Below are positions 10,491 through 35,414 of a DNA stretch of 64,000 nt, piece after piece (positions within the stretch are counted from its first letter, which is position 1; each line of letters begins with the position of its first letter). The stretch is from Phyllobates terribilis (taxonomy: Eukaryota). The stretch lies in assembly GCF_046119375.1 (NCBI RefSeq), contig NW_027362767.1, positions 262,322,001 through 262,386,000 of the forward strand, given 5' to 3'. The notes under the pieces are model-generated. The model searched no databases, had not been told where the DNA came from, and was given only the letters and a program-made list of their open reading frames with translations. A program made the position numbers and the translations under genes.

Positions 10491-11014
10491 TCACTTCTCA
10501 AGACTAATGCTCTCATCGGCCACTGCAAACACTGGGCTGATCGGAGCGGAGAACCTCGTCTGGTGGCTATGCAAGATGATGCAAGAAGAAGGGTCGAAGA
10601 AGATCAGCTCTCCGGCGTCCATGTCCACCAGGATACCGACTTGTTTGGGACTCTTGAGAAGTTCTACGGGGTGATGCTGAGAGTCGTGGGAAAAGCGGAA
10701 GTCTTTGTCGTAGCGAGAGAAGATCCAGGACACGGGGTTGTAGCCGAGCCTGGCATCATTGCCCGAGCCTTTTCGTGCGATAGATCTGTAGGTGATGCCA
10801 AGCTTGTAGGCACCGCAAGTCTCCACGTTCACCTTCCACATATGGATGCCCTTCTGGAAGGACTCTACTGCCAAGCAGTTGGGCCAGTGGTCGAATCTTT
10901 CAGGTCCGTCTGGATAGTCCTTTGCTTTCTTTAGGAAGAACTTAAGGCTGTTATCGTCTGATAAGGCAAGTAAGGGGCTCATGGTCTTCTCATCAAATGT
11001 GAGGCTTTCACAAG
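10491..11014 (-). CDS. BSPRY: BSPRY coding exon 6 (PRY-SPRY/B30.2 domain to stop codon)
   Basis: Acceptor cttacttttcag; reads (A)CESLTFDEKTMSPLLALSDD...GPERFDHWPNCLAVESFQKGIHMWKV...PVFAVADESISLEK*; 524 nt with phase matching exon 5. Confidence 0.93.
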
Positions 11015-11073
11015 CTGAAAAGTAAGAAGACGTTATGTCCCATCATCCTGAGAGGTTAGGTGATACTAACTGG

Positions 11074-13990
11074 TATACTGACCAGAGGTGTAGGAGAGGA
11101 CAGGAGAGTAATATATATGAAGATGTATTGTGTTATACTGACCAGAGGTGTAGGAGAGGACAGGAGAGTAATATATATGAAGATGTATTGTGTTATACTG
11201 ACCAGAGATGTAAGAGAGGACAGAAGAGTAAGATATATGAAGATGTATTGTGTTATACTGACCAGAGGTGTAGGAGAGGACAGGAGAGTAATATATATGA
11301 AGATGTATTGTGTTATACTGACCAGAGGTGTAAGAGAGGACAGAAGAGTAAGATATATGAAGATGTATTGTGTTATACTGACCAGAGGTGTAGGATAGGA
11401 CAGAAGAGTAAGATATATGAAGATGTATTGTGTTATACTGACCAGAGGTGTAGGAGAGGACAGAAGAGTAAGATATATGAAGATGTATTGTGTTATACTG
11501 ACCAGAGGTGTAGGAGAGGACAGAAGAGTAAGATATATGAAGATGTATTGTGTTATACTGACCAGAGGTGTAGGAGAGGACAGAAGAGTAAGATATATGA
11601 AGATGTATTGTGTTATACTGACCAGAGGTGTAGGAGAGGACAGAAGAGTAAGATATATGAAGATGTATTGTGTTATACTGACCAGAGGTGTAAGAGAGGA
11701 CAGAAGAGTAAGATATATGAAGATGTATTGTGTTATACTGACCAGAGGTGTAAGAGAGGACAGAAGAGTAAGATATATGAAGATGTATTGTGTTATACTG
11801 ACCAGAGGTGTAAGAGAGGACAGAAGAGTAAGATATATGAAGATGTATTGTGTTATACTGACCAGAGGTGTAGGAGAGGACAGAAGAGTAAGATATATGA
11901 AGATGTATTGTGTTATACTGACCAGAGGTGTAAGAGAGGACAGAAGAGTAAGATATATGAAGATGTATTGTGTTATACTGACCAGAGGTGTAAGAGAGGA
12001 CAGAAGAGTAAGATATATGAAGATGTATTGTGTTATACTGACCAGAGGTGTAGGAGAGGACAGAAGAGTAAGATATATGAAGATGTATTGTGTTATACTG
12101 ACCAGAGATGTAAGAGAGGACAGAAGAGTAAGATATATGAAGATGTATTGTGTTATACTGACCAGAGGTGTAAGAGAGGACAGAAGAGTAAGATATATGA
12201 AGATGTATTGTGTTATACTGACCAGAGGTGTAGGATAGGACAGAAGAGTAAGATATATGAAGATGTATTGTGTTATACTGACCAGAGGTGTAAGAGAGGA
12301 CAGAAGAGAAAGATATATGAAGATGTATTGTGTTATACTGACCAGAGGTGTAAGAGAGGACAGAAGAGTAAGATATATGAAGATGTATTGTGTTATACTG
12401 ACCAGAGGTGTAAGAGAGGACAGAAGAGTAAGATATATGAAGATGTATTGTGTTATACTGACCAGAGGTGTAGGAGAGGACAGAAGAGTAAGATATATGA
12501 AGATGTATTGTGTTATACTGACCAGAGGTGTAAGAGAGGACAGAAGAGAAAGATATATGAAGATGTATTGTGTTATACTGACAGAGGTGTAAGAGAGGAC
12601 AGAAGAGTAAGATATATGAAGATGTATTGTGTTATACTGACAGAGGTGTAAGAGAGGACAGAAGAGTAAGATATATGAAGATGTATTGTGTTATACTGAC
12701 CAGAGGTGTAAGAGAGGACAGAAGAGTAAGATATATGAAGATGTATTGTGTTATACTGACCAGAGGTGTAAGAGAGGACAGAAGAGTAAGATATATGAAG
12801 ATGTATTGTGTTATACTGACAGAGGTGTAAGAGAGGACAGAAGAGTAAGATATATGAAGATGTATTGTGTTATACTGACCAGAGGTGTAAGAGAGGACAG
12901 AAGAGTAAGATATATGAAGATGTATTGTGTTATACTGACCAGAGGTGTAAGAGAGGACAGAAGAGTAAGATATATGAAGATGTATTGTGTTATACTGACC
13001 AGAGGTGTAAGAGAGGACAGAAGAGAAAGATATATGAAGATGTATTGTGTTATACTGACCAGAGGTGTAGGAGAGGACAGGAGAGTAATATATATGAAGA
13101 TGTATTGTGTTATACTGACCAGAGATGTAAGAGAGGACAGAAGAGTAAGATATATGAAGATGTATTGTGTTATACTGACCAGAGGTGTAGGAGAGGACAG
13201 AAGAGTAAGATATATGAAGATGTATTGTGTTATACTGACCAGAGGTGTAAGAGAGGACAGAAGAGTAAGATATATGAAGATGTATTGTGTTATACTGACC
13301 AGAGGTGTAAGAGAGGACAGAAGAGAAAGATATATGAAGATGTATTGTGTTATACTGACCAGAGGTGTAGGAGAGGACAGAAGAGTAAGATATATGAAGA
13401 TGTATTGTGTTATACTGACAGAGGTGTAAGAGAGGACAGAAGAGTAAGATATATGAAGATGTATTGTGTTATACTGACCAGAGGTGTAAGAGAGGACAGA
13501 AGAGTAAGATATATGAAGATGTATTGTGTTATACTGACCAGAGGTGTAAGAGAGGACAGAAGAGAAAGATATATGAAGATGTATTGTGTTATACTGACCA
13601 GAGGTGTAGGAGAGGACAGAAGAGTAAGATATATGAAGATGTATTGTGTTATACTGACCAGAGGTGTAAGAGAGGACAGAAGAGAAAGATATATGAAGAT
13701 GTATTGTGTTATACTGACCAGAGGTGTAGGAGAGGACAGAAGAGTAAGATATATGAAGATGTATTGTGTTATACTGACCAGAGGTGTAAGAGAGGACAGA
13801 AGAGTAAGATATATGAAGATGTATTGTGTTATACTGACCAGAGGTGTAGGATAGGACAGAAGAGAAAGATATATGAAGATGTATTGTGTTATACTGACCA
13901 GAGGTGTAAGAGAGGACAGAAGAGTAAGATATATGAAGATGTATTGTGTTATACTGACCAGAGGTGTAAGAGAGGACAGAAGAGTAAGAT
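11074..13990. repeat. Homogeneous 60-bp minisatellite (about 49 units) in BSPRY intron 5
   Basis: Unit gttatactgaccagaggtgtaRgagaggacagaagagtaagatatatgaagatgtattgt; a few 59-bp units; degenerate copies continue to about 14460. Confidence 0.97.
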
Positions 13991-14462
13991 ACAGGGAAAA
14001 ATAATATATTAGATGAAGAGTCTTTTTAATGACCGGAGGTGTTGAAGAAGACAGAAGAATGCCTTATATTTACCAGAGGTGTTGGAGAGGACAGAGATAA
14101 ATAATATGTGAAGATGTAGGGATTTATACTCTCCAGAGGTGTAGGAGAAGACAAAGGAAGAAGATTTATGAAGGTGTAGTGTCTTATATTGATCAGAGGT
14201 GTTGAAGAATACAAAAGAAGAAAAAGTGGACTCTTCATCTGACCAGAGGTGTGCAAGAGGACAGAGGAAGAAGATATATGATCTTGCAGTTTCTTATACT
14301 GACTGGAGGTGTAGCAGAATATATACTATGAAGATATATAAATGCTTATTGTCCTATACTGCCCGGTGGTGTAAAAGGAGGACAGAGGAAGAATGTACTG
14401 TATATAAATGTGTAGTGTCTTAAACTGACTGGAGGAGTAGCAGAGGACCGACTAAGAAGATA

Positions 14463-16035
14463 CAGGTGCTTAACACAAAATTAGAATATCATCAAAAAGT
14501 TAATTTATTTCAGTTCTTCAATACAAAAAGTGAAACTCCTATATTATATAGAGTCATTAAAAACAGAGTGATCTATTTCAAGTGTTTATTTCTGTTAATG
14601 TTGATGATTATGGATTACAGCCAATGAAAACACAAAAGTCATTATCTCAGTAAATTAGAATACTTTATAACAACCGCTTGAAAAATGTTTTTAAAATCCG
14701 TAATGTTGTCCTACTGAAATGTATGTTCAGTAAATGCCTCAATACTTGGTCGGCTCCTTTTGCATCAATTACTGCATCAATGCGGCAATGTGGCATGGAG
14801 GCGATCAGCCTGTGGCACTGCTGAGGTGTTATGGAAGCCCAGGTTGCTTTGATAGCAGCCTTCAGCTCGTCTGCATTGTTGGGTCTGGGGTCTCTCATCT
14901 TCCTCTTGACAATACCCCATAGATTCTCTATAATAGATTCTCTATGGGGTTAAGGTCAGGCGAGTTTGCAGCCAATCAAGCACAGTGATACTGTTGTGTG
15001 TAAACCAGGTATTGGTACTTTTGGCAGTGTGGACAGGGGCCAAGTCCTGCTGGAGAATGACATTTCCATCTCCAAAAAGCTTGTCGGCAGAGGGAAGCAT
15101 GAAGTGCTGTAAAATGTCCTGGTAGACGGCTGCGCTGACTTTGGTCTTGATAAAACACAGTGGACCTACACCAGCAGATGACATGGCTCCCCAAACCATC
15201 ACTGATTGTGGAAACTTCACACTAGACCTCCAGCAGCTTGGATTGTGGCCTCTCCACTCTTCCTCCAGACTCTGGGACCTTGATTTCCAAATGAAATGCA
15301 AAATTTACTTTCATCTGAAAACAACACCTTGGACCACTGAGCAACAGTCCAGGTCTTTTCTCCTTGGCCCAGGTAAGACGCTTCTGGCGTTGTCTATTGG
15401 TCATGAGTGGCTTGACACAAGGTATGGGACACTTGTAGCCCATGTCCTGGATACGTCTGTGTGTGTGGCGGCTCTTGAAGCAATGACTCCAGCAGCAGTC
15501 CACTCCTTGTGAATCTCCTCCAAATGTTTGAATGGCCTTTTCTTAACAATCCTTTCAAGGCTGCAGTTATCCCGGTTACTTGTGCACCTTTTTCTACCAC
15601 ACTTTTTCCTTCCACTCAACTTTCCATTAATATGCTTGGATACAGCACTCTGTGAACAGCCATCTTCTTTAGCAATGACCTTTTGTGGCTTACCCTCCTT
15701 GTGGAGTGTGTCAGTGACTGCCTTCTGGACATCTGTCAAGTCAGCAGTCTTCTCCATGATTGTGGAGCCTACTGAAACAGACTAAGGGACCTTTTTAAAT
15801 GCTTAGGAAGCCTTTGCAGGTGTTTTTTTGTTAATTATTCTAATTTACTGAGATAATGACTTTTGTGTTTTCATTGGCCGTAAGCCATAATCATCAACAT
15901 TAACAGAAATAAACACGTGAAATAGATCACTCTGTTTGTAATGACTCTATATAATATATGGGTTTCACTTTTTGTATTGAAGAACTGAAATAAATTAACT
16001 TTTTGATGATATTCTAATTTTGTGAGAAGCACCTG
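14463..16035 (-). mobile_element. Tc1-family transposon (1573 bp, about 200-bp ITRs) with frameshifted transposase
   Basis: TA flanks (14461-14462, 16036-16037), ends caggtgct / agcacctg, and transposase fragments from MEKTADLTDVQK (15757) through VMVWGAMS, LQQDLAP and RIDAVIDAKG. Confidence 0.92.
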
Positions 16036-16037
16036 TA

Positions 16038-16505
16038 TATAAATGTTTAGTGTCCTATACTGACCGGAGGTGTAGCAGAGGACAGGGGAAAAGTATATAA
16101 GATGGTGTAGTGTCTTATACTGACCGGAGGTGTAGCAGAGGAGAGGGGAAGAGTATATAAAATGGTGTAGTGTCTTATACTGACCGGAGGTGTAGCAGAG
16201 GACAGGGGAAGAGTATATAAGGTGGTGTAGTGTCTTATACTGACTGGAGGTGTAGCAGAGGACAGGGGAAGGGTATATAAGATGGTGTAGTGTCTTATAC
16301 AGACTGGAGGTGTAGCAGAGGACAGGGGAAGAGTATATGAGATGGTGTAGTGTCTTATATTGACTGGAGGTGTAGCAGAGGACAGGGGAAGGGTATATAA
16401 GATGGTGCAGTGTCTTATACTGACCGGAGGTGTAGCAGAGGACAGGGGAAGAGTATATGAGATGGTGTAATGTCTTATACTGACCGGAGGTGTAGCAGAG
16501 GACAG
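16038..16505. repeat. 60-bp minisatellite (8 units) overlapping the 3' end and donor of BSPRY exon 5
   Basis: Unit gacaggggaagagtatataagatggtgtagtgtcttatactgaccggaggtgtagcagag; the gene-proximal unit includes the last 21 nt of exon 5 and its GT donor. Confidence 0.95.
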
Positions 16506-16609
16506 ACAGGGCCCACAGTCTGTTCAGTAATGGACTCTGACAACAATTCATGTTAAAGTTTAACTTCTCAGACTCCTGAGGTTCCAGAATTCCTTCAGCT
16601 TCTTCTGTT
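16485..16609 (-). CDS. BSPRY: BSPRY coding exon 5 (125 nt)
   Basis: Acceptor cattgtag; (R)TEEAEGILEPQESEKLNFNMNCCQSPLLNRLWALSVLCYTS; donor ccg|gtcagt at 16483-16484; phases fit exons 4 and 6. Confidence 0.9.
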
Positions 16610-16736
16610 CTACAATGAGAAGACACACACACGATAAGACGTATACCTGCCATCTACTGCTAATAAAGGCGACATCCACATCATGTATCAAATGGACATC
16701 AGCTCGGCAATGCAGACCTACATATCTCCATGGTAA

Positions 16737-18331
16737 CAGACCACCAACAGCTCCCAAGGTCAGACCCCGTAGTCACACTCCCTCCTATCTGCAGACCACC
16801 AACAGCTCCCGAGGTTGGACCCTGTAGTCACACTCCCTCCTATCTGCAGACCACCAACAGCTCCCGAGGTCAGACCCTGTAGTCACACTCCCTCCTATCT
16901 GCAGACCACCAACAGCTCCCGAGGTCGGACCCTGTAGTCACACTCCCTCCTATCTGCAGACCACCAACAGCTCCCGAGGTCGGACCCTGTAGTCACACTC
17001 CCTCCTATCTGCAGACCACCAACAGCTCCCGAGGTCAGACCCTGTAGTCACACTCCCTCCTATCTGCAGACCACCAACAGCTCCCGAGGTCGGACCCTGT
17101 AGTCACACTCCCTCCTATCTGCAGACCACCAACAGCTCCCGAGGTCGGACCCTGTAGTCACACTCCCTCCTATCTGCAGACCACCAACAGCTCCCGAGGT
17201 TGGACCCTGTAGTCACACTCCCTCCTATCTGCAGACCACCAACAGCTCCCGAGGTTGGACCCTGTAGTCACACTCCCTCCTATCTGCAGACCACCAACAG
17301 CTCCCGAGGTTGGACCCTGTAGTCACACTCCCTCCTATCTGCAGACCACCAACAGCTCCCGAGGTCAGACCCTGTAGTCACACTCCCTCCTATTCGCAGA
17401 CCGCCAACAGCTCCCGAGGTCGGACCCTGTAGTCACACTCCCTCCTATCTGCAGACCGCCAACAGCTCCCGAGGTCAGACCCTGTAGTCACACTCCCTCC
17501 TATCTGCAGACCGCCAACAGCTCCCGAGGTCAGACCCTGTAGTCACACTCCCTCCTATCTGCAGACCGCCAACAGCTCCCGAGGTCGGACCCTGTAGTCA
17601 CACTCCCTCCTATCCGCAGACCGCCAACAGCTCCCGAGGTCGGACCCTGTAGTCACACTCCCTCCTATCTGCAGACCGCCAACAGCTCCCGAGGTCAGAC
17701 CCTGTAGACACACTCCCTCCTATCTGCAGACCGCCAACAGCTCCCGAGGTCAGACCCTGTAGTCACACTCCCTCCTATCCGCAGACCACCAACAGCTCCC
17801 GAGGTCGGACCCTGTAGTCACACTCCCTCCTATCTGCAGACCGCCAACAGCTCCCGAGGTCAGACCCTGTAGTCACACTCCCTCCTATCTGCAGACCGCC
17901 AACAGCTCCCGAGGTCAGACCCTGTAGTCACACTCCCTCCTATCTGCAGACCACCAACAGCTCCCGAGGTCGGACCCTGTAGTCACACTCCCTCCTATCT
18001 GCAGACCACCAACAGCTCCCGAGGTTGGACCCTGTAGTCACACTCCCTCCTATCTGCAGACCACCAACAGCTCCCGAGGTTGGACCCTGTAGTCACACTC
18101 CCTCCTATCTGCAGACCACCAACAGCTCCCGAGGTCGAACCCTGTAGTCACACTCCCTCCTATCTGCAGACCGCCAACAGCTCCCGAGGTCAGACCCTGT
18201 AGTCACACTCCCTCCTATCTGCAGACCGCCAACAGCTCCCGAGGTCAGACCCTGTAGTCACACTCCCTCCTATCTGCAGACCACCAACAGCTCCCGAGGT
18301 CGGACCCTATAGTCACACTCCCTCCTATCTG
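16737..18331. repeat. 55-bp minisatellite (about 29 units) in BSPRY intron 4
   Basis: Unit gcagaccaccaacagctcccgaggtcggaccctgtagtcacactccctcctatct. Confidence 0.96.
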
Positions 18332-18701: not shown

Positions 18702-18727
18702 CTGTCCTCCATTTTATTTTCAGAAAC
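18702..18727 (-). CDS. BSPRY: BSPRY coding exon 4 (26-nt microexon, VSENKMED-R)
   Basis: Strong polypyrimidine acceptor ttttctttctcctctcag and donor ag|gtcagt; phase 0 to 2 links exons 3 and 5; short post-coiled-coil exons are typical of TRIM-like genes. Confidence 0.85.
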
Positions 18728-18934: not shown

Positions 18935-19165
18935 AATGAGGTTGAGGTCGTCCATGTTGGTCAGCATGTCCACCAGATAGCTCCTGATACCAGACAGCTT
19001 CTTGGTGGACTCGGTCCAGTGGGCTCTCTGGGTGAGGATCCCCTGCTGGGCCCGCTCCTCCTCCGCGTGGATCTCCTCCAGGAGGCGCTGCTCCTCATTG
19101 TCACACACCGTGCGGATGAAGTTCAGCCGCTGGATGATCATCTCACGAGCTTTTCTTGCCGTGCT
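18935..19165 (-). CDS. BSPRY: BSPRY coding exon 3 (231 nt, coiled coil)
   Basis: Acceptor ttacag; STARKAREMIIQRLNFIRTVCDNEEQRLLEEIHAEEERAQQGIL...MDDLNLI; donor att|gtatgt. Confidence 0.92.
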
Positions 19166-19396
19166 CTGTAACAGAGGTGCAGGGCTCATTACACTCTATC
19201 AGATGTACATGGAGGATAACATGAATACAGAGCTGCGTTCACAATTCTACAGGATTCAGAGCTAAAATCTCCCTTCTGCATCGTACACAAAGGTAACCGC
19301 AGTTTGGGAAGTGTCAGCCTCTGTACAGTGATCTGAGATAGGAAGAACTAACTGTCCTCCAGCATTGTGGGAGCTGATCTTGATAAACCACCTGAC

Positions 19397-19837
19397 AACA
19401 GCACCAGCAGAATAGTGAGTGCAGCTCTGGAGTATAACATAGGATGTAGTTCAGGATCAGTACAGGATAAGTAATGTAATGTATGTACAGAGTGACTGCA
19501 CCAGCAGAATAGTGAGTGCAGCTCTGGAGTATAATACAGGATGTAACTCAGGATCAGTAATGTAATGTATGTACACAGTGACTACACCAGCAGAATAGTG
19601 AGTGCAGCTATGGAGTATAATACAGGATGTAACTCAGGATCAGTACAGGATAAGTAATGTAATGTAAGTACACAGTGACTCCACCAGCAGAATAGTGAAT
19701 GCAGCTCTGGGGTATAATACAGGATGTAACTCAGGATTAGTACAGGATCAGTAATGTAATGTATGTACACAGTGACTCCACCAGCAGAATAGGGAGTGCA
19801 GCTCTGGAGGATAATACAGTGTAAGTCAGGATCAGTA
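19397..19837. repeat. 97-bp satellite, segment left of the Gypsy insertion
   Basis: Unit gtgactgcaccagcagaatagtgagtgcagctctggagtataatacaggatgtaactcaggatcagtacaggataagtaatgtaatgtatgtacaca. Confidence 0.95.
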
Positions 19838-20861
19838 TGTGGCACCCCAGGGGTCTGGTTCCCACAGTGATAGCAATATTACGTCTGTGAGCAGGTGGGA
19901 GGTTTCCTGGTCAGACATCCTATGCATGCCACACCTCCTGCCCAGTCCTGGGAGGGGAAGAACTTCCCCTATATAAAGCTGGGGCTGAGGCAGGGTTAGT
20001 GTGTAGAGAAAGAGCAGAGAACACAGACAGAGACACAGTCTGGTCTGTAGTGGAGCAGCTATAGGAAAGAAAGATCAGGAGCTCTGTGGGAGCTGTGCTA
20101 AAAGAGGTCAGGGCTGGAAGCTGTAGAGCTCGCCCTGATTGAAGAGTTCTTACCGGACCCGGAGTCCGAGGCTGTGGGGACTAATCCTTACCCCGCAGCA
20201 GAAACCGCCCGGCAGGGGATTTCAGGTTCTCTGGCCAAGAAACCCGAAGGCACGGTCACACGCAAGGGACCAGCACCGCGACGTGGAGCGGAAGCTACCA
20301 AAAGGCCCCGAGTCACCGGCCATACGGGTGAGCACCACACGGTACACTCAGGGACGTGGGCTACTTTTACCCGCCTCTAGCAAGGTAGCCAGAAGAGTAC
20401 GATTAGTTGGGGAGGCCTACAACTCCGCCTGGCCAGGGGAGATCCCATCAGCTCACGGACTGACCAGGCCCCGATCGCTAGCCAGTACTCCGGGAGGGTC
20501 TACCTTGTCACCAGTAAAGACCCAGAACTACACCGCACCGTCTCTGAGTGGTTCCTGCTACCCCCCTTCAAACACGTCGGTTGCCCTGAGGCCATACCCC
20601 TCCCGTTGGGGGTTCTACCAGCTACGCTGCACAACCTTACCACCGGCCTCAGCGGTCTGCCCTGCAGCGGCGGCTTCATAGCCGCATTCAACGGGTGGCG
20701 TAGTCGAACACCGTACCATCTTCTGCTAAACTCTGCCGCTCAGTTTGACTCCCTGGGCACGGACCGGGTCACCGCCACGAGACTACTACCCCTATCAGAT
20801 CCGGCTCCGGGTAGGCTCCCGCGTGCGCAACGCTACTCAGCACAGGCCCAGGGGCGCGTCA
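19838..20861 (+). repeat. 5' LTR (1024 bp)
   Basis: Matches 27384-28407 except T/C at 20228/27774 by visual comparison; TATA-like tatataaa near 19970; agtaaa poly(A)-like signal near 20513. Confidence 0.97.
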
Positions 20862-20866
20862 ACTTT

Positions 20867-20886
20867 TGGCGTAGTCGGCAGGATTC
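20867..20886 (+). promoter_or_regulatory. Primer binding site complementary to the tRNA-Ser 3' end
   Basis: tggcgtagtcggcaggattc is the reverse complement of the vertebrate tRNA-Ser 3' end gaatcctgccgactacgcca; it lies 5 nt after the LTR. Confidence 0.9.
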
Positions 20887-21304
20887 CGTGCCCGCAACCA
20901 CCGGGTACTGCGTGCCTGAAAAAGAGACTTTTAAACTTACCTGTGGTGAAGATTCCCGCCATCCGACGCCATCTTCTACCTTCTTCCCGCCATCCATGGA
21001 GTTTTCCCACCGTTGGACGCCATCTTCTGTCTTCTTCCCGCCATCCGTGGAGTTTTCCCGCCGTTGGACGCCATCTTGAAGACGCCGCGCGGGAAGAAGA
21101 GGGGCGTGGACTCCGAAAAGCCCGCGAGAACTGAAGCCCCGCCTCACGTCCGGACGTTGCGTAAGGTCCTGGAAGGAGCCCAGCAGACGCCGACGTCACA
21201 GGAGCGCGACGGAAGGTCCTCGACCCTGACGATCCACTGCGGAGCCGCGGCCTACGGAAGAGGATCATCTCAAGGTAGGCCACGGTCCACTAGGGGGGAG
21301 GAAG

Positions 21305-22285
21305 ATGTCGGATACGGAGGAGAGCTTCACTGCCACAGCCACCGCCAGCGCCACCGCTGCAGCGGTCATGCCTTTCACGATGCCCTATATCCCGGGGGCA
21401 GCCTGGCTACCCCAGTACTCAGGGGAGTCACATACCCTGAATGACTTTAGAGAAAAGCTGGATAGCCTCTTCCAGGTGTACCCCCTCACAGAAGAGCAAA
21501 AAGTGAGCATCCTGGTGGCCCAACTAACCGGGGCAGCCCAAAGGGAGGTAAAGTCCTGGCCACCTGGGAGGAGGACTGTCGCAGGGATATTAACCCGGCT
21601 GAAGGACACCTTTGATACCCGCACCTCAGCTGAGATTTATCTTAGATTCTACGGGTGCAAACAGCAAGCACATGAGAGTATAAGAGACTATGCTTTAAAC
21701 CTACAAGAGGCCCTGAGAGCCATTAAGCAGACCGACCCTGACGGCGTGGGAAACGAGGACAGGCTGTTGACCGAACAATTTATAGAGGGACTATATTGCA
21801 ATGCCCACCGAACCCAGTTGCGGGCAATGGCCTTACAGGATCCTCATCTGGACTTTGCACAGTTCAAGGACAGAGCCATCCGGGTGCTCCGAGAACCGGC
21901 ACCGGGTGGCGTTGTGACCCACAGGCGCCCTACTACCGCTTACCACCAGGAGGCGGCGCCCTTGTCGGCAGGGCCTGTGGGAGCTGATGCGCAGGCTTTG
22001 AACAATGACCCGGCTCCAGACCTGCACCATCAGGTCCAAGAGCTAGCTAAAAGCGTTGCCGCGCTAACCCGAACTGTGCAGTCGTTACAGGTTTCTGCTC
22101 CAGGGAAGATCCAGCTGGCATCCGGACCGGAGGACATCCCGTGGCGTCGACCAAGGAGGACCCCACCGGCCAGAGGAAGACCCAGCGACCGATACAACGA
22201 GGACGGACAACCCATCTGCCGCCGCTGCAATCAACCCGGACATATGGCAAGGTACTGTCCTTTAAACTGGCACAACCTGGGGTAG
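21305..22285 (+). CDS. gag: Gypsy Gag (PNMA-like capsid plus CCHC zinc knuckle), 326 aa, intact
   Basis: LPQYSGE capsid-type motif and C-terminal CRRCNQPGHMARYC knuckle, located after the PBS. Confidence 0.9.
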   Translation: MSDTEESFTATATASATAAAVMPFTMPYIPGAAWLPQYSGESHTLNDFREKLDSLFQVYPLTEEQKVSILVAQLTGAAQREVKSWPPGRRTVAGILTRLKDTFDTRTSAEIYLRFYGCKQQAHESIRDYALNLQEALRAIKQTDPDGVGNEDRLLTEQFIEGLYCNAHRTQLRAMALQDPHLDFAQFKDRAIRVLREPAPGGVVTHRRPTTAYHQEAAPLSAGPVGADAQALNNDPAPDLHHQVQELAKSVAALTRTVQSLQVSAPGKIQLASGPEDIPWRRPRRTPPARGRPSDRYNEDGQPICRRCNQPGHMARYCPLNWHNLG

Positions 22286-25200
22286 AGGGCCAACCCCCAG
22301 GAATAAGATCACCAGGCCCATCAAACTGGCGTGACAAATATGTGGGAGGACGTCCAGTCTTGCCTGTGGTACTGGATGGCATTCCTATGAGTGCCCTACT
22401 TGACACCGGGTCACAGGTCACCACCATCCCGTACGTGCTCTTTAAGCAGTACTGGAATGACTCGGATATAACCCGCTACCCTGACGACGACTTGAGTATC
22501 ATCGCCAGTAATGGTCAACCCGTGCCACAGATCGGATTCAAAGAGATGACCATTAAAATCGGTAGAGTCGAACTGGCAGCACAGGGACTGATCATTGTAG
22601 ACATTGACAAGCGCGAGAGTCACCCAAAGATAACGCTAGGAACTAATGTGATTGAAAATTGTCTTGCAGAGGTGATTTTCATTTTACAGCAGGTTGCCAA
22701 GAACGCCAGCTCCGGCCAGCAGCGAGTGCTCCAAAAAGAGATCCGGGCACTGATGCGACGGCAACAGGTGGAACTCTCCGGTGGTGAGATTGGTAGCGTG
22801 AGAATGTGTGACCCTTTCCCTATTGCCATGCCCCCAAAAAGTGAAATGATGATTTGGTGCCGGGCAGCTATTGGTCTAAGAGGTAGAGACTACCAAGCAA
22901 TGGTAGAACCCGTCTACTCAGACAGTAGGCCCACCATTTTGACAGCACGGGGGGTGGTTGACGTACGCCATGGGAGGGTGCCCGTTCGCATAATAAACAT
23001 CGGGAAGAGAGAAGTACACCTGCCCCGGTATGCCACGCTAGCTAAATTGTTCACCATAAACCAGAATGCTGTACAGGCCGTGGAACCCTTGCCTCCATCT
23101 CAACCAGAGGAAGGTAACGGCTCTAACAAACCAATGGAGGACTGGTGTCAGCAACTACATCTGGGTACTGACTCCACTCCCTCACACCAAAAGCAGGGAG
23201 TCTATCGGGTGGTTCAAGAGTACGAGAGAGTGTTTAGTAAACACCCGTTAGACTTCGGGCGAGTAAAGGGGGTAGAACACCACATCCCCACGGGAGACCA
23301 TCCTCCCATAAAGGAGAGATACCGACCCGTACCCCCTGCACACTACCAACACGCCAAGGGGATGCTTAGAGACATGAAGGAGGCTGGGGTAATCAGGGAT
23401 AGCTGTAGCCCCTGGGCAGCTCCACTAGTCTTGGTTAAAAAGAAAGACAACACCATGAGGATGTGTGTAGATTACCGGAAAATCAACCGTATCACACACA
23501 AAGATGCGTACCCCTTACCAAGGATAGAGGAGTCTTTGGCTGCTTTAAGATCTGCTAACTTCTTCTCTACTTTGGATCTCAATGGCGGGTACTGGCAGGT
23601 TCCTGTAGCAGAGGCGGACCGGGAGAAGACCGCATTCACCACCCCGATGGGACTTAGCGAGTTTACCTGCATGCCGTTCGGACTCTGCAACGCACCAGGA
23701 ACCTTCCAACGGTTGATGGAATGCTGTCTGGGACACCGAAACTTCGAGACGGTCCTGTTATACCTGGACGATGTCATCGTCTACTCCAAGACCTACGAGG
23801 ACCACCTGAAACACCTGGCAGAAGTGTTCGAAGCCCTGGCAAACTACGGCCTAAAGGTGAAACCCTCCAAGTGTCACCTCCTGAAACCAAAGGTGCAGTA
23901 CCTGGGACACGTGGTGAGTGCTGACGGAGTGGCTCCCGACCCTGATAAGATCACCGCAATTAAGGAATGGCCAAGCCCCTCCAGCGTAAAGGAGGTGCGG
24001 CAGTTCCTCGGGTAGGCTACTACCGAAGATTCATTCCCGGTTTCACCAAAAAGGCAGCTCCTATGCAGGACCTCCTGATAGGCCAGTCCAGGAAGGCCAA
24101 GAACCAGAAGCCACCCTTCAGATGGGAGAAGCTGGAAGAAGAGTCCTTCCGCCAGCTGAAGATGGCCCTGTCACGGGTGTGTTGCCACGAAGATCGTCAC
24201 GAGTACACAGCCTGACTTCTCGCAGCTGACTTGTTGGTGCTTTGTGTTTCTCGGCAGTGAGGGAGTTAATTCTCTCTCTCTCTCTGGGCTAGATGAGGTC
24301 CAGCCTCGCCCAGCTGCAATCAATACTTCTGTAGTGAGACTCCTTCATATACCTGCTGGTCTGTTTGGGAGGTGTCGGTGAAAGCATTTCATTCAGACTG
24401 ACAGAGCAGATCGTGGTGTTTGGAGTTGCTGAGATAAGTGTATTTGGAAGTGTTTTTTCCCTTTCCTCGCTTTATCATTTATCTCCTTTCCCGTTGGTTT
24501 TCCCTCTGTTGTAGTTGAGAAGTTGTTTGTATGCAAGGTGGTTTTGGTTTTTCCCTTGTACTGTCTCGTTCGTCTAAATACTGTGTTTGGGCATATTATT
24601 TCTTGTTCCCTTTGGTAGTGATCGGGGTCCTTCTCAGGACTAGATTACTGAGGTGCAGGGATCTTCAGGAGGTAGGGGTTACGCTGGCGGCCTGGACCTC
24701 TGTACCTTTAACAGTACCTCCAGGTTGAGGGATTAGTCAGGGCCCCAGCTTAGGGTCAGCTTAGGCCTCCTACCTCCAGTATACAGAGACAGCGTGACAG
24801 GCCCTCACGGGGGATGAAATCCTGGCGTACCCTGATTACAGCCAGCCCTTTATCCTCTACACCGACGCAAGTAACATCGGGCTAGGAGCCGTACTGTCCC
24901 AGATCCAGCAGGGGAAAGAACGAGTAATTGCTTACGCCAGCCGAAAACTGCGACCCACCGAAAGAAACCCTGAGAATTACAGCTCATTCAAGTTAGAATT
25001 CTTGGCAGTGGTGTGGGCAGTCACCGAACGCTTTAAGCACTACCTCGCCTCTTCCCGGTTCACCGTGTACACGGATAACAACCCGTTGACACACCTGGAT
25101 ACAGCAAGACTCGGTGCCCTGGAGCAGAGATGGATGGCCCGCCTGTCCAACTTTGAGTTCACAATCAAATACCGGGCAGGACGCTCCAATACCAACGTGG

Positions 25201-27020
25201 ATGCCTTGTCCAGAATGCCAAACCTACCGGACGTGGGGGAAGATCCAGAGGAACTGGAAGAGGTTGAACTTCCCGCGTTCCACCATCATGGGACTATCCA
25301 GTATTCCCACCGTGTAAGGAGTAAGCAATCCGCTACGTTCAATCCCTTACCTCATTACAACTGGGCGGAAACGCAAGACAGTGACCCCGCCGTCCGACTG
25401 GTGAAGGAGATGCTGACTCAGCCAGATGCCCGCCTTGACCCAGACGCTCCGGAGGAGGCCAAGCAACTGTGGATTGAGAAGAGTCGACTGTTCCTTTACA
25501 AGGGGAAGTTGTGCCGCAGAATGGTTAACTCCCGGACGCATGAACTGATCTGGCAAGTAGTGGTGCCAAGAAGAGACGCGGCTATGGTACTGGAGGCATA
25601 CCACGACAGAGCTGGGCACTTCGGATGGAAGAAGCTGGAGTTCCTGCTGCGCGGGCGGTTCCACTGGGTAGGCATGAGAGGAACCATCGAGAGGTGGTGC
25701 AGGGACTGTGGACCGTGCCACCTAAGAAGGAAGGACCGAGCCAGCCAGAAGACTCCCTTGCAGCCCATCATCACCCGACAGCCACTGGAACTGGTAGCCC
25801 TGGACCATGTGAAACTGGCTCCAAGCAGATCTGGGTATGTCTACGCCCTCACAATCGTAGATCATTACTCCCGGTTCCTGGTGGTGGTCCCGGTCAAGGA
25901 CTTAACGGCTCAAACAGCAGCTAGAGCCTTCCAGCAGCACTTCTGCCGTCCACACGGATACCCGGAGCAGGTGCTGACGGACCAGGGACCTGCCTTTGAA
26001 GCGGAAGTCTTCCAGGAGTTCTGCACTCTGTATGGCTGCCGGAAGATAAGAACAACACCCTATCATCCGCAAACCAATGGGCTCTGCGAGAAAATGAACC
26101 AGGTGGTGATAGATCTTCTGAAAACATTGCCCCTGGAGGAACGCAGTCTGTGGCCTGAGAAACTGCCTGATCTGGTGGACCTATACAACCACATCCCGGT
26201 AGGTTCTACCAACTGTACCCCGGCTTACCTAATGAGAGCAAGAACTGGTAAGCTTCCTGTTGATCTGGAGATGGGAGTCCTGACACCCGAGGACACTTCA
26301 CCAGAAGCAGACTGGGACACAGAAAGGCAGCAGCAGTACCGGAAAGTACAGGAGAGCGTGGAGCGAAGTCTCTGTCAAGCTAGAGAAAGACAGGAGAAGA
26401 CTTACAACCAGTATGCTCCCGCTGTTCCCCTGGTACCTGGAGAGCAGGTCTTGAAGAGGAAGAGACGCCTCCACAAGTTGGACGACCAGTGGCAGAAGGA
26501 CCCGTACACCGTACTGCCCTCAAGCCATGAGAACCCGAAAGTCTGCATAATCAGTAAGGATGGAGGAGAAACCACAGCCATTGTATCCCGAGATCACCTG
26601 AAGAAGTGTCCCGAACAGCTACGAAGCCCTGAAGAAGAACAAGAAGACCCTCAACCCGCAGAGGAAAGGGAAGATATGGTTAGTACTGTGCTCGGAGACT
26701 TCCCTCGGTCTTGGACTCAAGTCAATGGCGCAGTTGTGGTACCCGTCCTCACCTTCCTCCAACCAGCATCTCAAGTACCTACGGAGAAACAGGTAGAGCT
26801 GGAAGAGCAGCCGGTCCAGGAGGCAGAAGACCCCACACAAGCAGACCAGGAGGATCAACCCTCTGCTTATAGTGAGCCTGCCGTACCCCTAGTGAGCCAA
26901 AGAGCCCGTAGACAGCTGCCCAGTTTACCTTTGACAGCTCCTACACCTGGTAGCTCAGGACCAGTCAGTCAGCTCTGTAGGTCCACTAGAGGCCAGTTAC
27001 CCGTACGTTGGAGGATCTAA
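22261..27020 (+). pseudogene. pol: Gypsy Pol (PR-RT-RNase H-integrase) disrupted by an about 4-nt deletion near 24012 and a solo-LTR insertion
   Basis: LLDTGSQVT protease, YLDD RT (23761), YTDAS RNase H, HHCC and DDE integrase; frame shifts at FLG/VGYYRRF; removing 24169-24804 restores KMAL-TGDEILAYPDY. Confidence 0.93.
24169..24799. mobile_element. Nested solo LTR (631 bp) of a second LTR retrotransposon
   Basis: Terminal inverted repeats tgtcacg / cgtgaca, 5-bp target duplication GGCCC (24164-24168, 24800-24804), no coding capacity. Confidence 0.9.
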
Positions 27021-28407: not shown

Positions 28408-29564
28408 AGTACAGGATAAGTAATGTAATGTATGTATACAGTGACTGCACCAGCAGAATAGTGAGTGCAGCTCTGGAGTATACTACAGAATGAACTCAGG
28501 ATCAGTACAGGATAAGTAATTTAATGTATGTACACAGTGACTGCACCAGCAGAATAGTGAGTGCAGCTCTGGAGTATAATACATGATGTAACTCAGGATA
28601 AGTAATGTAATGTATGTACACAGTGACTCCACCAGCAGAATAGTGAGTGCAGCTCTGGAGTATAATACATGATGTAACTCAGGATCAGTACAGGATAAGT
28701 AATGTAATGTATGTACACAATGGCTGCACCAGCAGAATAGTGAGTGCAGCTCTGGAGTATAATACAGGATGTAACTCAGGATCAGTACATGATAAGTAAT
28801 GTAATGTATGTGCACAGTGACTCCACCTGCAGAATAGTGAGTGCAGCTCTGAAGTATAATACAGGATGTAACTCAAGATCAGTACAGGATAAGTAATGTA
28901 TGTACACAGTGACTACACCAGCAGAATAGTGAGTGCAGCTCTGGAGTATAATACAGGATGTAACTCAGGATAAGTACAGGATAAGTAATGTAATGTATGT
29001 ACACAGTGACTGCACCAGCAGAATAGTGAGTGCAGGTCTGGAGTATAATACAGGAGGTAACTCAGGATCAGTACAGGATAAGTAATGTAATGTATGTACA
29101 CAGTGGCCGCACCAGGAGAATAGTGAGTGCAGCTCTGGAGTATAATACAGGATGTAACTCAGGATCAGTACATGATAAGTAATGTAATGTATGTGCACAG
29201 TGACTCCACCAGCAGAATAGTGAGTGCAGCTCTGGAGTATAATAGAGGGTGTAACTCAGGATCAGTACAGATAACTAATGTAATGTATGTACACAGTGAC
29301 TGCACCAGCAGAATAGTGAGTGCAGCTCTGGAGTATAATACAGGATGTAACTCAGGATCAGTACAGGATCAGTAATGTAACGTATGTACACAGTGACTAC
29401 ACCAGCAGAATAGTGAGTGCAGCTCTGGGGTATAATACAGGATGTAACTCAGGATCAGTACAGGATCAGTAATGTAATGTATGTATACAGTGACTGCACC
29501 AACAGAATAGTGAGTGCAGCTCTGGAGTATAATACAGGATGTAACTCAGGATCAGTACAGGATA

Positions 29565-31174: not shown

Positions 31175-31742
31175 TAAGTCATGTAATGTATGTACACAGT
31201 GACTGCACCAGCAGAATAGTGAGTGCAGCTCTGGAGTATAATACAGGATGTAACTCAGGATCAGTACAGGATCAGTAATGTAATGTATGTACACAGTGAC
31301 TGCACCAGCAGAATAGTGAGTGCAGCTCTGGAGTATAATACAGGATGTAACTCAGGATCAGTACAGGATCAGTAATGTATGTATACAGTGACTGCACCAG
31401 CAGAATAGTGAGTGCAGCTCTGGAGTATAATACAGGATGTAACTCAGGATCAGTACAGGATCAGTAATGTATGTACACAGTGACTGCACCAGCAGAATAG
31501 TGAGTGCAGCTCTGGAGTATAATACAGGATGTAACTCAGGATCAGTACAGGATAAGTAATGTATGTATGTACACAGTGACTGCACCAGCAGAATAGTGAG
31601 TGCAGCTCTGGAGTATAATACAGGATGTAACTCAGGATCAGTACACGATCAGTAATGTATGTATACAGTGACTGCACCAGCAGAATAGTGAGTGCAGCTC
31701 TGGAGTATAATACAGGATGTAACTCAGGATCAGTACAGGATA

Positions 31743-33351: not shown

Positions 33352-35414
33352 TAAGTCATGTAATGTATGTACACAGTGACTGCACCAGCAGAATAGTGAG
33401 TGCAGCTCTGGAGTATAATACAGGATGTAACTCAGGATCAGTACAGGATCAGTAATGTAATGTATGTACACAGTGACTGCACCAGCAGAATAGTGAGTGC
33501 AGCTCTGTAGTATAATACAGGATGTAACTCAGGATCAGTACAGGATAAGTAATGTAATGTATGTACACAGTGACTGCACCAGCAGAATAGTGAGTGCAGC
33601 TCTGGAGTATAATACAGGATGTAACTCAGGATCAGTACAGGATCAGTAATGTATGTATACAGTGACTGCACCAGCAGAATAGTGAGTACTGCTCTGGAGT
33701 ATAATACAGAATGTAACTCAGGATCAGTACAGGATCAGTAATGTAATGTATGTACACAGTGACTGCACCAGCAGAATAGTGAGTGCAGCTCTGGAATATA
33801 ATACAGGATGTAACTCAGGATCAGTACAGGATAAGTAATGTATGTATGTACACAGTGACTGCACCAGCAGAATAGTGAGTGCAGCTCTGGAGTATAATAC
33901 AGGATGTAAGTCAGGATCAGTACAGGATCAGTAATGTATGTATACAGTGACTGCACCAGCAGAATAGTGAGTGCAGCTCTGGAGTATAATAAAGGATGTA
34001 ACTCAGGATCAGTACAGGATAATAATGTAATGTATGTACACAGTGACTGCACAAGCAGAATAGTGAGTGCAGCTCTGGAGTATAATACAGGATGTAACTC
34101 AGGATCAGTACAGGATAAGTAATGTAATGTATGTACACAGTGACTGCAACAACAGAATAGTGAGTACAGCTCTGGGGTATAATACATGATGTAACTCAGG
34201 ATCAGTACAGGATAAGTAATGTAATGTATGTACACAGTGACTGCACCAGCAGAATAGTGAATGCAGCTCTGGAGTATAATACAGGACGTAACTCAGGATC
34301 AGTAATGTAATGTATGTACACAGTGACTCCACCAGCAGAATAGGGAGTGCAGCTCTGGAGTATAATACAGTGTAAGTCAGGATCAGTACAGGATAAGTAA
34401 TGTAATGTATATATACAGTGACTGCACCAGCAGAATAGTGAGTGCAGCTCTGGAGTATAATACATGATGTAACTCAGGATCAGTACAGGATAAGTAATTT
34501 AATGTATGTACACAGTGACTGCACCAGCAGAATAGTGAGTGCTGCTCTGGAGTATAATACAGGATGTAACTCAGGATCAGTACAGGATATGTAATGTAAT
34601 GTATGTGCACAATGACTCCACCAGCAGAATAGTGAGTGTAGCTCTGGAGTATAATACAGGATGTAACTCAGGATCAGTACGGGATCAGTAATGTAATGTA
34701 TGTACACAGTGACTCCTCCAGCAGAATAGTGAATGCAGCTCTGGAGTATAATACATGATGTAACTCAGGATCGGTACAGGATAAGTAATGTAATGTATGT
34801 ACACAGTGACTCCACCAGCAGAATAGTGAGTGCAGCTCTGGAGTATAATACATGATGTAACTCAGGATCAGTACAGGATAAGTAATGTAATGTATGTACA
34901 CAGTGACTGCACCAGCAGCATAGAGAGTGCAGCTCTGGAGTATGATACAGGATGTAACTCAGGATCAGTACAGGATAAGTAATTTAATGTATGTACACAG
35001 TGACTGCACCAGCAGAATAGTGAGTGCTGCTCTGTAGTATAATACAGGATGTAACTCAGGATCAGTACAGGATCAGTAATGTAATGTATGTACACAGTGA
35101 CTGCACCAGCAGAATAGTGAGTGCAGCTCTGGGGTATAATACAGGATGTAACTCAGGATCAGAACAGGATAAGTAATGTAATGTATGTACACAGTGACTG
35201 CACCAGCAGAATAGTGAGTACAGCTCTGGAGCATAATACAGATTTAGCTATGGATGAAAGTGAATCACACATTGTTATTTCAGGTCTATGGTATTTTCAA
35301 AGTTGAAAATATTGGAAATTGTGATAAGGAGCCTTCACCTCCATGCTGGCAGTTATCGTCCTGTATATGGCATATATCTCGGGGTTACACGCTGTGCACA
35401 GAGGATATAATTAC

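What the first reader, a model, noticed from the sequence alone, without database searches (positions are those of the whole stretch)
16038..16505. In-frame ladder of 8 splice donors: a minisatellite made from the BSPRY exon-5 junction
Seen: the 60-bp unit contains the last 21 nt of exon 5 plus the donor. GT donors recur exactly every 60 nt at 16484, 16424, 16364, 16304, 16244, 16184, 16124 and 16064; five are identical ccg|gtcagtat. The exon-5 frame stays open through all units (repeat GQYKTLHHLIYSSPVLCYTS) and every donor is phase 1, so each can join exon 6 in frame. Inference: alternative donor choice would add 20 x n residues (n = 0-7) between the coiled coil and PRY-SPRY, a VNTR-tuned isoform series whose range changes with copy number. 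I know of no description of this for BSPRY.
Basis: partly seen in the sequence, partly recalled or inferred. Interest (0 to 1): 0.82.

Follow-up and report, generated by a model that had tools for sequence, protein, structure and literature searches.

The report
Silent splice-donor repeats in frog BSPRY intron
A 60-base repeat copied from the end of exon 5 and its splice signal fills almost all of the next intron of a frog BSPRY gene, but the assembled RNA I could inspect splices only at the first copy, as in known human cases such as the F7 gene.

Summary
A 60-bp tandem array lies at 16035-16505 on the minus strand. It has eight GT sites exactly 60 nt apart, five of them identical (CCG|GTCAGTAT). 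All eight are phase 1, and the exon-5 frame stays open through them.

The array is only the upstream tip of a roughly 65-unit minisatellite. That minisatellite makes up nearly the whole 5,470-nt BSPRY intron 5 and is split by a 1.6-kb Tc1-like transposon.

In four RNA assemblies from two studies, one ~2-kb contig per run joins exon 5 at the first donor (16485) to exon 6 (11014). The contigs give no depth over the array. No database protein carries the repeat peptide, and no frog BSPRY model checked has an insert at this junction.

Orthologous arrays exist in Eleutherodactylus, Engystomops, Leptodactylus and Mixophyes, so the array is old. The in-frame property is not conserved among them.

In this frog the exon end itself carries the array's sequence variant, changing the protein from CCTT to CYTS. 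A former pseudo-site probably became the real donor.

This class is already described: human F7, IFI6, CBS, LMNB2 and PDGF. The scan has also noted similar arrays elsewhere in this genome.

One point is unresolved. Eight other RNA-like runs hold 18-40% of the array's words, and I could not lay them.

The parts
16485..16609 (-). BSPRY exon 5 (125 nt), ending in codons for ...LWALSVLCYTS plus the first base of a split codon
   Evidence: In each of four runs an RNA contig covers 16485-16611. The last 2 nt fit both exon 4 and the intron. The spliced translation is open and matches orthologues.
16483..16484 (-). Authentic 5' splice site GT (context CCG|GTCAGTAT), the only donor seen joined to exon 6
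   Evidence: The loose end before 16485 in X1, X2 and X3 equals window 10985-11014, the start of exon 6. In X15 the contig ends at the same base. Predicted U1 duplex energy is -7.1 kcal/mol.
16035..16505 (-). Proximal part of the 60-bp minisatellite: 7.9 units, with seven pseudo-donors at 16424, 16364, 16304, 16244, 16184, 16124 and 16064
   Evidence: TRF, sequence, site table. Contig depth is zero over 16058-16462 in four RNA runs.
14463..16035 (-). Tc1-like DNA transposon inserted into the eighth unit, flanked by a TA duplication (16036-16037 and 14461-14462)
   Evidence: 214-nt terminal inverted repeats at 14460-14673 and 15825-16038, 94% complementary. Weak, sub-threshold DDE_3 and HTH hits. 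Removing the element and one TA restores a continuous repeat unit (read).
13992..14460 (-). About eight degenerate units of the same minisatellite
   Evidence: Sequence. Core matches at 14173-14193 and 14409-14429.
11074..13991 (-). Distal, homogeneous part of the same minisatellite: 48.7 units at 97% identity, most carrying CTG|GTCAGTAT
   Evidence: TRF. About 45 sites with U1 duplex energy -6.9 kcal/mol, almost equal to the real donor. Consensus is 79% identical to the proximal units.
11015..11016 (-). 3' splice site AG of intron 5. The array ends about 55 nt upstream of it.
   Evidence: Sequence and the RNA contig junction.
10494..11014 (-). Coding part of BSPRY exon 6 (PRY-SPRY domain, stop codon included)
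   Evidence: Pfam PRY E=6e-13 and SPRY E=1e-11. tblastn to frog BSPRY.
18702..18727 (-). BSPRY exon 4, a 26-nt micro-exon (VSENKMED), donor ACAG|GTCAGTGC
   Evidence: The loose end behind 16611 in the RNA contigs reads exon 4 preceded by the end of exon 3.
18935..19177 (-). BSPRY exon 3 (coiled-coil part)
   Evidence: tblastn to P0001 and P0003. The junction is confirmed by the RNA loose end.

Best explanation
The eight-donor ladder is the upstream end of an old intronic minisatellite. Its founding unit was a duplication of the last 21 nt of BSPRY exon 5 plus the first 39 nt of intron 5, made in an ancestor of hyloid and myobatrachoid frogs. The array then grew and turned over by slippage or unequal exchange. 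In this frog it makes up almost the whole intron: about 65 units, with a Tc1-like transposon inside. Shown: splicing in the assembled RNA uses the most upstream donor. Inferred: the downstream copies are silent pseudo-5' splice sites, as in the human F7 intron-7 minisatellite, where a 5'-to-3' scanning-type choice takes the first functional site. The period of 60 and the open frame are incidental. Inferred: in this lineage an unequal exchange replaced the exon's last codons and the original donor with an array-type unit. That changed CCTT to CYTS, and the proximal eight units were then re-amplified from the new junction.
For: Array extent and family. Only the first donor is joined to exon 6 and the array has zero contig depth in X1, X2, X3 and X15. 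The junction sequences were verified. Database checks: no database protein shares words with the repeat peptide. All frog BSPRY models checked show LC[CY]T[TS] directly followed by [AVI]CE, with no insert. Orthologous arrays start at the same junction and in the same register in E. coqui (60 bp x ~14), Engystomops (47 bp x 6.7), Leptodactylus and Mixophyes (60 bp x 12.3). Pelobates and Nanorana have unique sequence after the donor. The in-frame property is not conserved: E. coqui pseudo-sites lie at 53+60n nt with a stop after 62 nt, and Engystomops has period 47. Exon-end transfer: the exon end is ctgctgcaccaccg in E. coqui, Leptodactylus and Mixophyes. The arrays of E. coqui, Engystomops, Leptodactylus and the distal array here carry tacacctc. 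The exon end here is ctgctacacctccg, the array state. Precedent: PMC1557585 describes the F7 case and lists IFI6 6-16, CBS, LMNB2 and PDGF.
Against: The RNA evidence is from assembled contigs, which drop rare variants, and the tool itself warns that a hole proves nothing. Eight other RNA-like runs of the same species (X17, X22, X25, X27, X30-X33) hold 18-40% of the array's sampled words. That is as much as DNA runs hold (32-50%). An isoform with two extra units would hold 35%. The unit consensus is 76-88% identical between species, while four-fold sites are only 50-67% identical. A purely neutral by-product does not obviously predict that. About 50 pseudo-sites pair with U1 as well as the real donor, so their silence rests on position alone, which I could not test.
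Confidence: 0.72

Rival explanations
1. Some pseudo-donors are used, most likely the first one or two. This would give minor BSPRY isoforms with 20 or 40 extra residues between the coiled coil and the PRY-SPRY domain, as happens at the IFI6 (6-16) and CBS minisatellites.
For: Four pseudo-sites are identical to the real donor over the 9-mer and its context, all are in phase, and the frame is open. RNA-like runs X17, X22, X25 and X27 hold 34-40% of the array words, close to the 35% expected from a +2-unit isoform. In IFI6 and CBS two pseudo-sites are used.
Against: Four RNA assemblies with depths of 45-115 on the BSPRY contig show no contig with array sequence. No predicted protein carries the repeat peptide. 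No annotated frog BSPRY has an insert, including Mixophyes and Leptodactylus, where some pseudo-sites are also in frame. DNA runs hold a similar share of the words, so unspliced RNA explains equally well. F7, LMNB2 and PDGF use only the authentic site.
Confidence: 0.2
2. The array is kept by selection as an intronic element. One possibility is a platform of U1-binding sites and pyrimidine-rich motifs that helps define the short exon 5 with its non-consensus GTCAGT donor, or that protects the intron from premature processing.
For: The array has persisted at the same site in two neobatrachian superfamilies. The unit consensus is 76-88% identical between species, against 50-67% at four-fold sites. 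In E. coqui the array consensus is closer to the other species' arrays than E. coqui's own first intron copy is.
Against: Copy number, period and degeneracy vary widely: 6.7 x 47 bp, about 14 x 60 bp, and about 65 x 60 bp. Many units have lost donor quality, for example GTCATT in E. coqui, CCT|GT in Engystomops, and GTCAAT or GTCTGT here. A transposon sits inside the array. Pelobates and Nanorana splice the same exon without any array. The consensus of many copies can stay near the ancestral unit without selection.
Confidence: 0.12
3. The array or its copy number is an assembly artefact.
For: DNA runs hold only 32-50% of the sampled array words. Copy number could not be checked with short-read contigs.
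Against: DNA runs from three samples in two studies hold the array's words. The units carry distinct single-base variants rather than being perfect copies. Orthologous arrays exist in four other frog assemblies.
Confidence: 0.02

Closest known systems
Human F7 intron-7 37-bp VNTR (Borensztajn et al. 2006, PMC1557585)
   Same: It is a minisatellite whose first unit spans the exon-intron boundary. The authentic donor is followed by identical pseudo-sites, and only the most upstream site is used in normal mRNA (here).
   Different: F7 copies 4 exon bases and has about 5 pseudo-sites. Here 21 exon bases are copied, there are about 65 units, and the array fills the whole intron. The competence of the pseudo-sites was shown by mutagenesis for F7 but is untested here.
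Human IFI6 (6-16) exon-2 minisatellite and CBS intron-13 31-bp VNTR (cited in PMC1557585; Turri et al. 1995)
   Same: Both are boundary-spanning minisatellites that reiterate the donor.
   Different: [quoted passage not shown] Here no such transcript appeared in four RNA assemblies.
Human LMNB2 (100 bp x 10-15) and PDGF intron-4 (81 bp x 16-18) boundary minisatellites (cited in PMC1557585)
   Same: They have long units and many copies, and only the authentic donor is used.
   Different: These are different genes and taxa. I know of no report that those arrays overwrote the exon end or persisted across superfamilies, and I did not check this.
Other donor-copying arrays noted by this scan in the same frog genome (ALAD exon 1, s1-209235; three genes, s1-224811)
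   Same: They are locally made tandem arrays that start at a real 5' splice site and copy it tens of times.
   Different: Those arrays sit at first introns. This one is at an internal coding exon, is in frame, and has orthologues in other frogs that I examined.

Membership tests
Boundary-spanning minisatellite with silent 5' pseudo-splice sites (F7 IVS7 type) | A tandem array whose first unit spans the exon-intron boundary | tested here: met
   The array runs 16035-16505 and the exon ends at 16485. The last 21 exon bases are part of the unit.
Boundary-spanning minisatellite with silent 5' pseudo-splice sites (F7 IVS7 type) | The authentic donor sequence is reiterated downstream | tested here: met
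   Four of the seven proximal pseudo-sites are identical to CCG|GTCAGTAT. About 45 distal sites read CTG|GTCAGTAT with nearly the same U1 pairing energy.
Boundary-spanning minisatellite with silent 5' pseudo-splice sites (F7 IVS7 type) | Only the most upstream donor is used in mature mRNA | tested here: inconclusive
   Met at contig level in four runs. However, contigs drop rare variants, and eight other RNA-like runs hold array words.
Boundary-spanning minisatellite with silent 5' pseudo-splice sites (F7 IVS7 type) | Pseudo-sites become active when the upstream site is inactivated | not testable with these tools
   This needs minigene mutagenesis. There is indirect support: the present donor has the array's sequence state, as if a pseudo-site had taken over.
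Boundary-spanning minisatellite with silent 5' pseudo-splice sites (F7 IVS7 type) | Copy number varies between individuals (VNTR) | not tested
   Short-read contigs cannot count the units. DNA runs hold only 32-50% of the words, which is uninformative.
Minisatellite providing several used splice donors (IFI6 6-16 / CBS type) | Transcripts spliced at one or more pseudo-sites | tested here: inconclusive
   None in four RNA assemblies. No protein carries the repeat peptide.
BSPRY orthologue | PRY-SPRY C-terminal domain, and best matches named B box and SPRY domain-containing protein | tested here: met
   Pfam PRY and SPRY above their cut-offs. Frog BSPRY proteins are 79-93% identical over the exons.
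Tc1/mariner DNA transposon (the insertion in the array) | Terminal inverted repeats, a TA target duplication and a DDE transposase | tested here: inconclusive
   214-nt inverted repeats and a TA on both sides are present. The DDE_3 hit, at E=0.0034 and 17.7 bits, is below Pfam's cut-off, and the ORF is fragmented.

The most novel reading that the evidence does not exclude
The intron-5 minisatellite is not inert. It has persisted for a very long time in hyloid and myobatrachoid frogs, with a unit more conserved than synonymous sites. It has rewritten the end of a conserved coding exon (CCTT to CYTS) by handing the splice junction to one of its own units. In some tissues its first pseudo-sites may be used to make +20 or +40 residue BSPRY isoforms.
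Probability: 0.15. Interest if true: 0.6.

Novelty: new member of a known kind. Interest (0 to 1): 0.32.

Why it matters
Arrays of identical splice donors are natural experiments on how the spliceosome picks one site among equals. This frog intron offers about 50 near-equal donors and an in-frame read-out, a larger test bed than human F7. The comparison across frogs adds two things I did not find in the papers I read. Such an array can persist at one junction across two frog superfamilies. Its turnover can also move the real junction into a repeat unit and so change two residues of a conserved protein. If the pseudo-sites prove to be used in some tissue, BSPRY would gain a length-variable linker. 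The present evidence makes that unlikely.

Tried and rejected
Only 15950-16736 could be laid, so exon 5 to exon 6 joints were read from loose ends rather than as joints.
Those runs remain unexamined.
- Searching 5.8 billion proteins with the four-unit repeat peptide found no candidate. The 260-aa read-through ORF matched only the exon-5 part of BSPRY orthologues.
- DNA could not be fetched for six frogs. Anomaloglossus, Dendropsophus, Pseudophryne and Leptobrachium are not on record. The files for Bufo gargarizans and Dendrobates tinctorius are too large. The array-to-exon transfer in those lineages therefore rests on protein sequence alone.
- MaxEntScan is not available offline. I used U1 5'-end duplex energies as a proxy.
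- My first four-fold-site count used the wrong exon-6 frame. It was redone correctly.
- Pfam at the default threshold found nothing in the transposon ORFs. Only weak hits appeared at E up to 1.
- I rejected the idea that the unit is a dispersed genome-wide repeat captured by the exon. All 58 core matches in the 64-kb window lie in this intron, and the outgroups have the exon end as single-copy coding sequence.

Full report

Yes. Tandem Repeats Finder reports a 60-bp array at 16035-16505 with 7.9 copies and 93% matches.

Read on the minus strand, GT dinucleotides in the same unit position lie at 16484, 16424, 16364, 16304, 16244, 16184, 16124 and 16064.
- Five sites read CCG|GTCAGTAT.
- The other three read CCA|GTCAAT, CCA|GTCTGT and CCA|GTCAGT.
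- All are multiples of 60 nt from the first site, so all are phase 1.

The exon-5 frame has no stop between 16656 and 15873. The unit shares its last 21 nt with the end of exon 5.

The in-frame property is not statistically remarkable. One period in three is a multiple of 3. My own estimate is that a 20-codon unit lacks a stop in a given frame about 38% of the time. Because the units are near-identical, one open unit makes them all open.

**2.

The same repeat family continues downstream. There are about eight degenerate units at 13992-14460. A very homogeneous block of 48.7 units follows at 11074-13991, with 97% matches. That block ends about 55 nt before the acceptor of exon 6.

A 21-nt core of the unit has 58 matches with up to 3 mismatches in the window. 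All are on the gene strand and inside this intron, against 0.01 expected by chance.

A 1.6-kb element separates the proximal eight units from the rest.
- It has 214-nt terminal inverted repeats at 14460-14673 and 15825-16038, 94% complementary.
- It has a TA on each side.
- It carries fragmented ORFs with weak, sub-threshold DDE_3 and helix-turn-helix hits.

It looks like a Tc1-like transposon. Removing it together with one TA restores a continuous unit.

Intron 5 is therefore 5,470 nt long and is essentially one minisatellite of about 65 units with a transposon in it. The scan's note s1-211485 on the same window says the same of 11015-14460.

**3. Gene and exon structure**

Frog proteins named "B box and SPRY domain-containing protein" are the best matches. 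Exon 6 has PRY and SPRY domains above Pfam's cut-offs. tblastn with two frog BSPRY proteins places the exons on the minus strand.

| Exon | Window coordinates | Note |
|---|---|---|
| 3 | ends at 18935 | coiled-coil part |
| 4 | 18727-18702 | 26-nt micro-exon |
| 5 | 16609-16485 | 125 nt |
| 6 | starts at 11014, coding ends at 10494 (stop codon included) | PRY-SPRY domain |

Joined in this order, the exons give an open frame reading ...LNLIVSENKMEDRTEEAEG...LWALSVLCYTSACESLTFDEK....

**4. Which donor is used?**

Four runs of the same species from two studies were laid on 15950-16736: X1, X2, X3 and X15. All are stored as assembled contigs.
- In each run a single contig of 1.7-2.0 kb, at depth 45-115, covers exactly 16485-16611.
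- In X1, X2 and X3 its continuation beyond 16485 is identical to window 10985-11014, the first 30 bases of exon 6.
- In X1, X2 and X3 its continuation beyond 16611 is exon 4 preceded by the end of exon 3.
- For X15 the loose ends at those two places are not among those listed; its contig has the same boundaries.
- Contig depth is zero in every bin from 16058 to 16462 in all four runs.

Database checks agree with this.
- No protein among 5.8 billion shares words with the repeat peptide.
- The 260-residue read-through ORF matched only the exon-5 part of orthologues.
- None of about 24 amphibian BSPRY models checked has extra residues at this junction. That includes Mixophyes and Leptodactylus, where some pseudo-sites are also in frame.

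The dominant product therefore uses the first donor.

There are limits to this evidence.
- Contigs drop rare variants, and the tool warns that a hole proves nothing.
- A second run search showed that eight other RNA-like runs of the same species hold 18-40% of the array's sampled words. DNA runs hold 32-50%.
- An isoform with two extra units would hold 35%. Unspliced RNA could give the same share.
- I had no read-laying run left, so this is unresolved.

**5. Donor strength**

MaxEntScan was not available, so I computed duplex energies with the U1 5' end as a proxy.

| Site class | U1 duplex energy (kcal/mol) |
|---|---|
| Real donor and its four identical copies | -7.1 |
| About 45 distal CTG|GTCAGTAT sites | -6.9 |
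| Units that have lost the G at -1 | -3.2 to -3.4 |

About 50 sites in the intron are as good as the real one by this measure. The choice of the first site is therefore positional.

**6. Origin and age**

I fetched the BSPRY locus from six other frogs.

| Species | Locus | Intron 5 and array |
|---|---|---|
| Eleutherodactylus coqui | L003 | 863 nt, of which about 14 units of 60 bp run from the donor to about 35 nt before the acceptor |
| Engystomops pustulosus | L001 | 6.7 units of 47 bp, a deletion derivative |
| Leptodactylus fuscus | L007 | degenerate 60-bp array with 35- and 94-bp sub-periods |
| Mixophyes fleayi | L005 | 12.3 units of 60 bp starting at the exon boundary |
| Pelobates cultripes | L004 | unique sequence after the donor |
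| Nanorana parkeri | L006 | unique sequence after the donor; the intron has an assembly gap, which I left alone |

Where the array exists, the register is the same in every species, with 20-21 exon bases in the unit.

By NCBI taxonomy these carriers span Hyloidea and Myobatrachoidea, while Nanorana is in Ranoidea. The array therefore most likely arose once from the exon-5 junction, after the split from ranoids. From my memory of frog time-trees, not checked here, that is on the order of 100 million years ago.

The first 20 or so intron bases of single-copy Pelobates (GTCAGTACCAGGCACTGC...) resemble the start of the unit. This fits a local origin.

**7. The array has fed back on the exon**

The exon ends ...ctgctgcaccaccg (residues CCTT) in E. 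coqui, Leptodactylus and Mixophyes. Nearly all other amphibians also have CCTT.

The arrays of E. coqui, Engystomops, Leptodactylus and the distal array here all carry ...tacacctc.... In this frog the exon itself ends ...ctgctacacctccg (residues CYTS). It has exactly the two array-state bases, and the first intron bases are array-type too.

The chance that two random substitutions in the last 21 exon bases hit those positions with those bases is roughly 0.003, by my rough estimate.

The simplest reading is an unequal exchange or deletion that fused exon 5 to a downstream unit, so that a former pseudo-site is now the real donor. All eight proximal units carry the chimeric ctgctac form. They therefore appear to be a younger re-amplification of the new junction. 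The distal block is an older lineage, 79% identical to the proximal units.

Bufo gargarizans, Dendrobates tinctorius and Anomaloglossus also have CYTS. Their DNA could not be fetched.

**8. Is the in-frame ladder conserved?**

No.
- In E. coqui the pseudo-sites lie at 53+60n nt, out of frame, and the read-through frame stops after 62 nt.
- In Engystomops the period is 47 and the frame stops after 113 nt.
- In Mixophyes and Leptodactylus some sites are in frame and others are not.

This argues against a conserved coding role.

**9. An unexplained point**

The unit consensus is 76-88% identical between species. Four-fold degenerate sites of exons 5 and 6 are only 50-67% identical, and the non-repeat intron flanks are about 52-61% identical. 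The simple binomial P values run from 7.5e-3 to 3e-7.

In E. coqui the array consensus is closer to the other species' arrays than E. coqui's own first intron copy is. This could reflect selection on the units. It could also be a consensus effect of many copies. I could not separate the two.

**10. Comparison with what is known**

Borensztajn et al. (PMC1557585) describe the human F7 intron-7 37-bp VNTR, whose first unit spans the exon boundary.
- Its identical pseudo-sites are functional but silent.
- The most upstream functional site is always chosen.

The same paper lists other boundary-spanning minisatellites.
- IFI6 6-16 has 25 pseudo-sites, of which two are used.
- CBS intron 13 has two pseudo-sites used.
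- LMNB2 and PDGF use only the authentic site.

The present case is a new member of this known kind. The scan has also noted donor-copying arrays elsewhere in this genome: ALAD (s1-209235) and three other genes (s1-224811), where a follow-up reached a similar verdict. I found no paper on such an array in BSPRY.

**11. Verdict**

- The origin from the exon-5 junction is supported.
- The isoform ladder is not supported by the RNA I could inspect, though minor use is not excluded.
- The most interesting additions are the age of the array, its take-over of the whole intron, and the likely array-to-exon transfer that changed two residues.

Noticed in passing
window 16040-16484; runs X17, X22, X25, X27, X30-X33: Eight RNA-like runs of the same species hold 18-40% of the array's sampled 31-mers. 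That is about as much as DNA runs hold (32-50%), yet the four runs I laid show none. The cause could be unspliced RNA, tissue-specific retention or pseudo-site use.
   Followed up: partly
window 16737-18331: A second large minisatellite (55 bp x 29, 97% matches) fills most of BSPRY intron 4, ending about 125 nt upstream of exon 5. It is unrelated in sequence to the intron-5 array.
   Followed up: no
window 19402-19837, 28408-29564, 31175-31742, 33352-35241; L007:4079-4519: A 97-bp tandem repeat family recurs at four places in the BSPRY introns. By eye, the same unit seems to occur, in reverse orientation, in the Leptodactylus fuscus BSPRY locus. It may be a widespread frog repeat or a transposon-borne array.
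   Followed up: no
window 20139-27020 (+ strand): Long ORFs with gag-like, protease/reverse-transcriptase (YLDDVIVYS) and integrase-like sequence suggest an LTR retrotransposon. It is inserted antisense in the BSPRY intron upstream of exon 3.
   Followed up: no
window 15950-16038: The terminal repeat of the Tc1-like element attracts hundreds of RNA contigs with summed depths up to 42,000. The transposon family is therefore abundant in transcripts of this frog.
   Followed up: no
window 16245, 16305, 16365 (minus strand): Three proximal units read ...ccctgtcctctgctacacctccag, a pyrimidine tract followed by AG. They are also acceptor-like, so splicing within the array is conceivable. No RNA contig shows it.
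   Followed up: no
window 18702-18727: Exon 4 is a 26-nt micro-exon whose donor (ACAG|GTCAGTGC) is of the same non-consensus GTCAGT type as the exon-5 donor.
   Followed up: partly
L004:15103-16706 (Pelobates cultripes): Pelobates intron 5 has its own unrelated 62-bp x 26 minisatellite, starting about 220 nt inside the intron. Frog BSPRY introns seem generally prone to minisatellites.
   Followed up: no
unit consensus across window, L003, L005, L007: The repeat unit consensus is 76-88% identical between frog families, while four-fold degenerate sites are only 50-67% identical. This is unexplained.
   Followed up: partly
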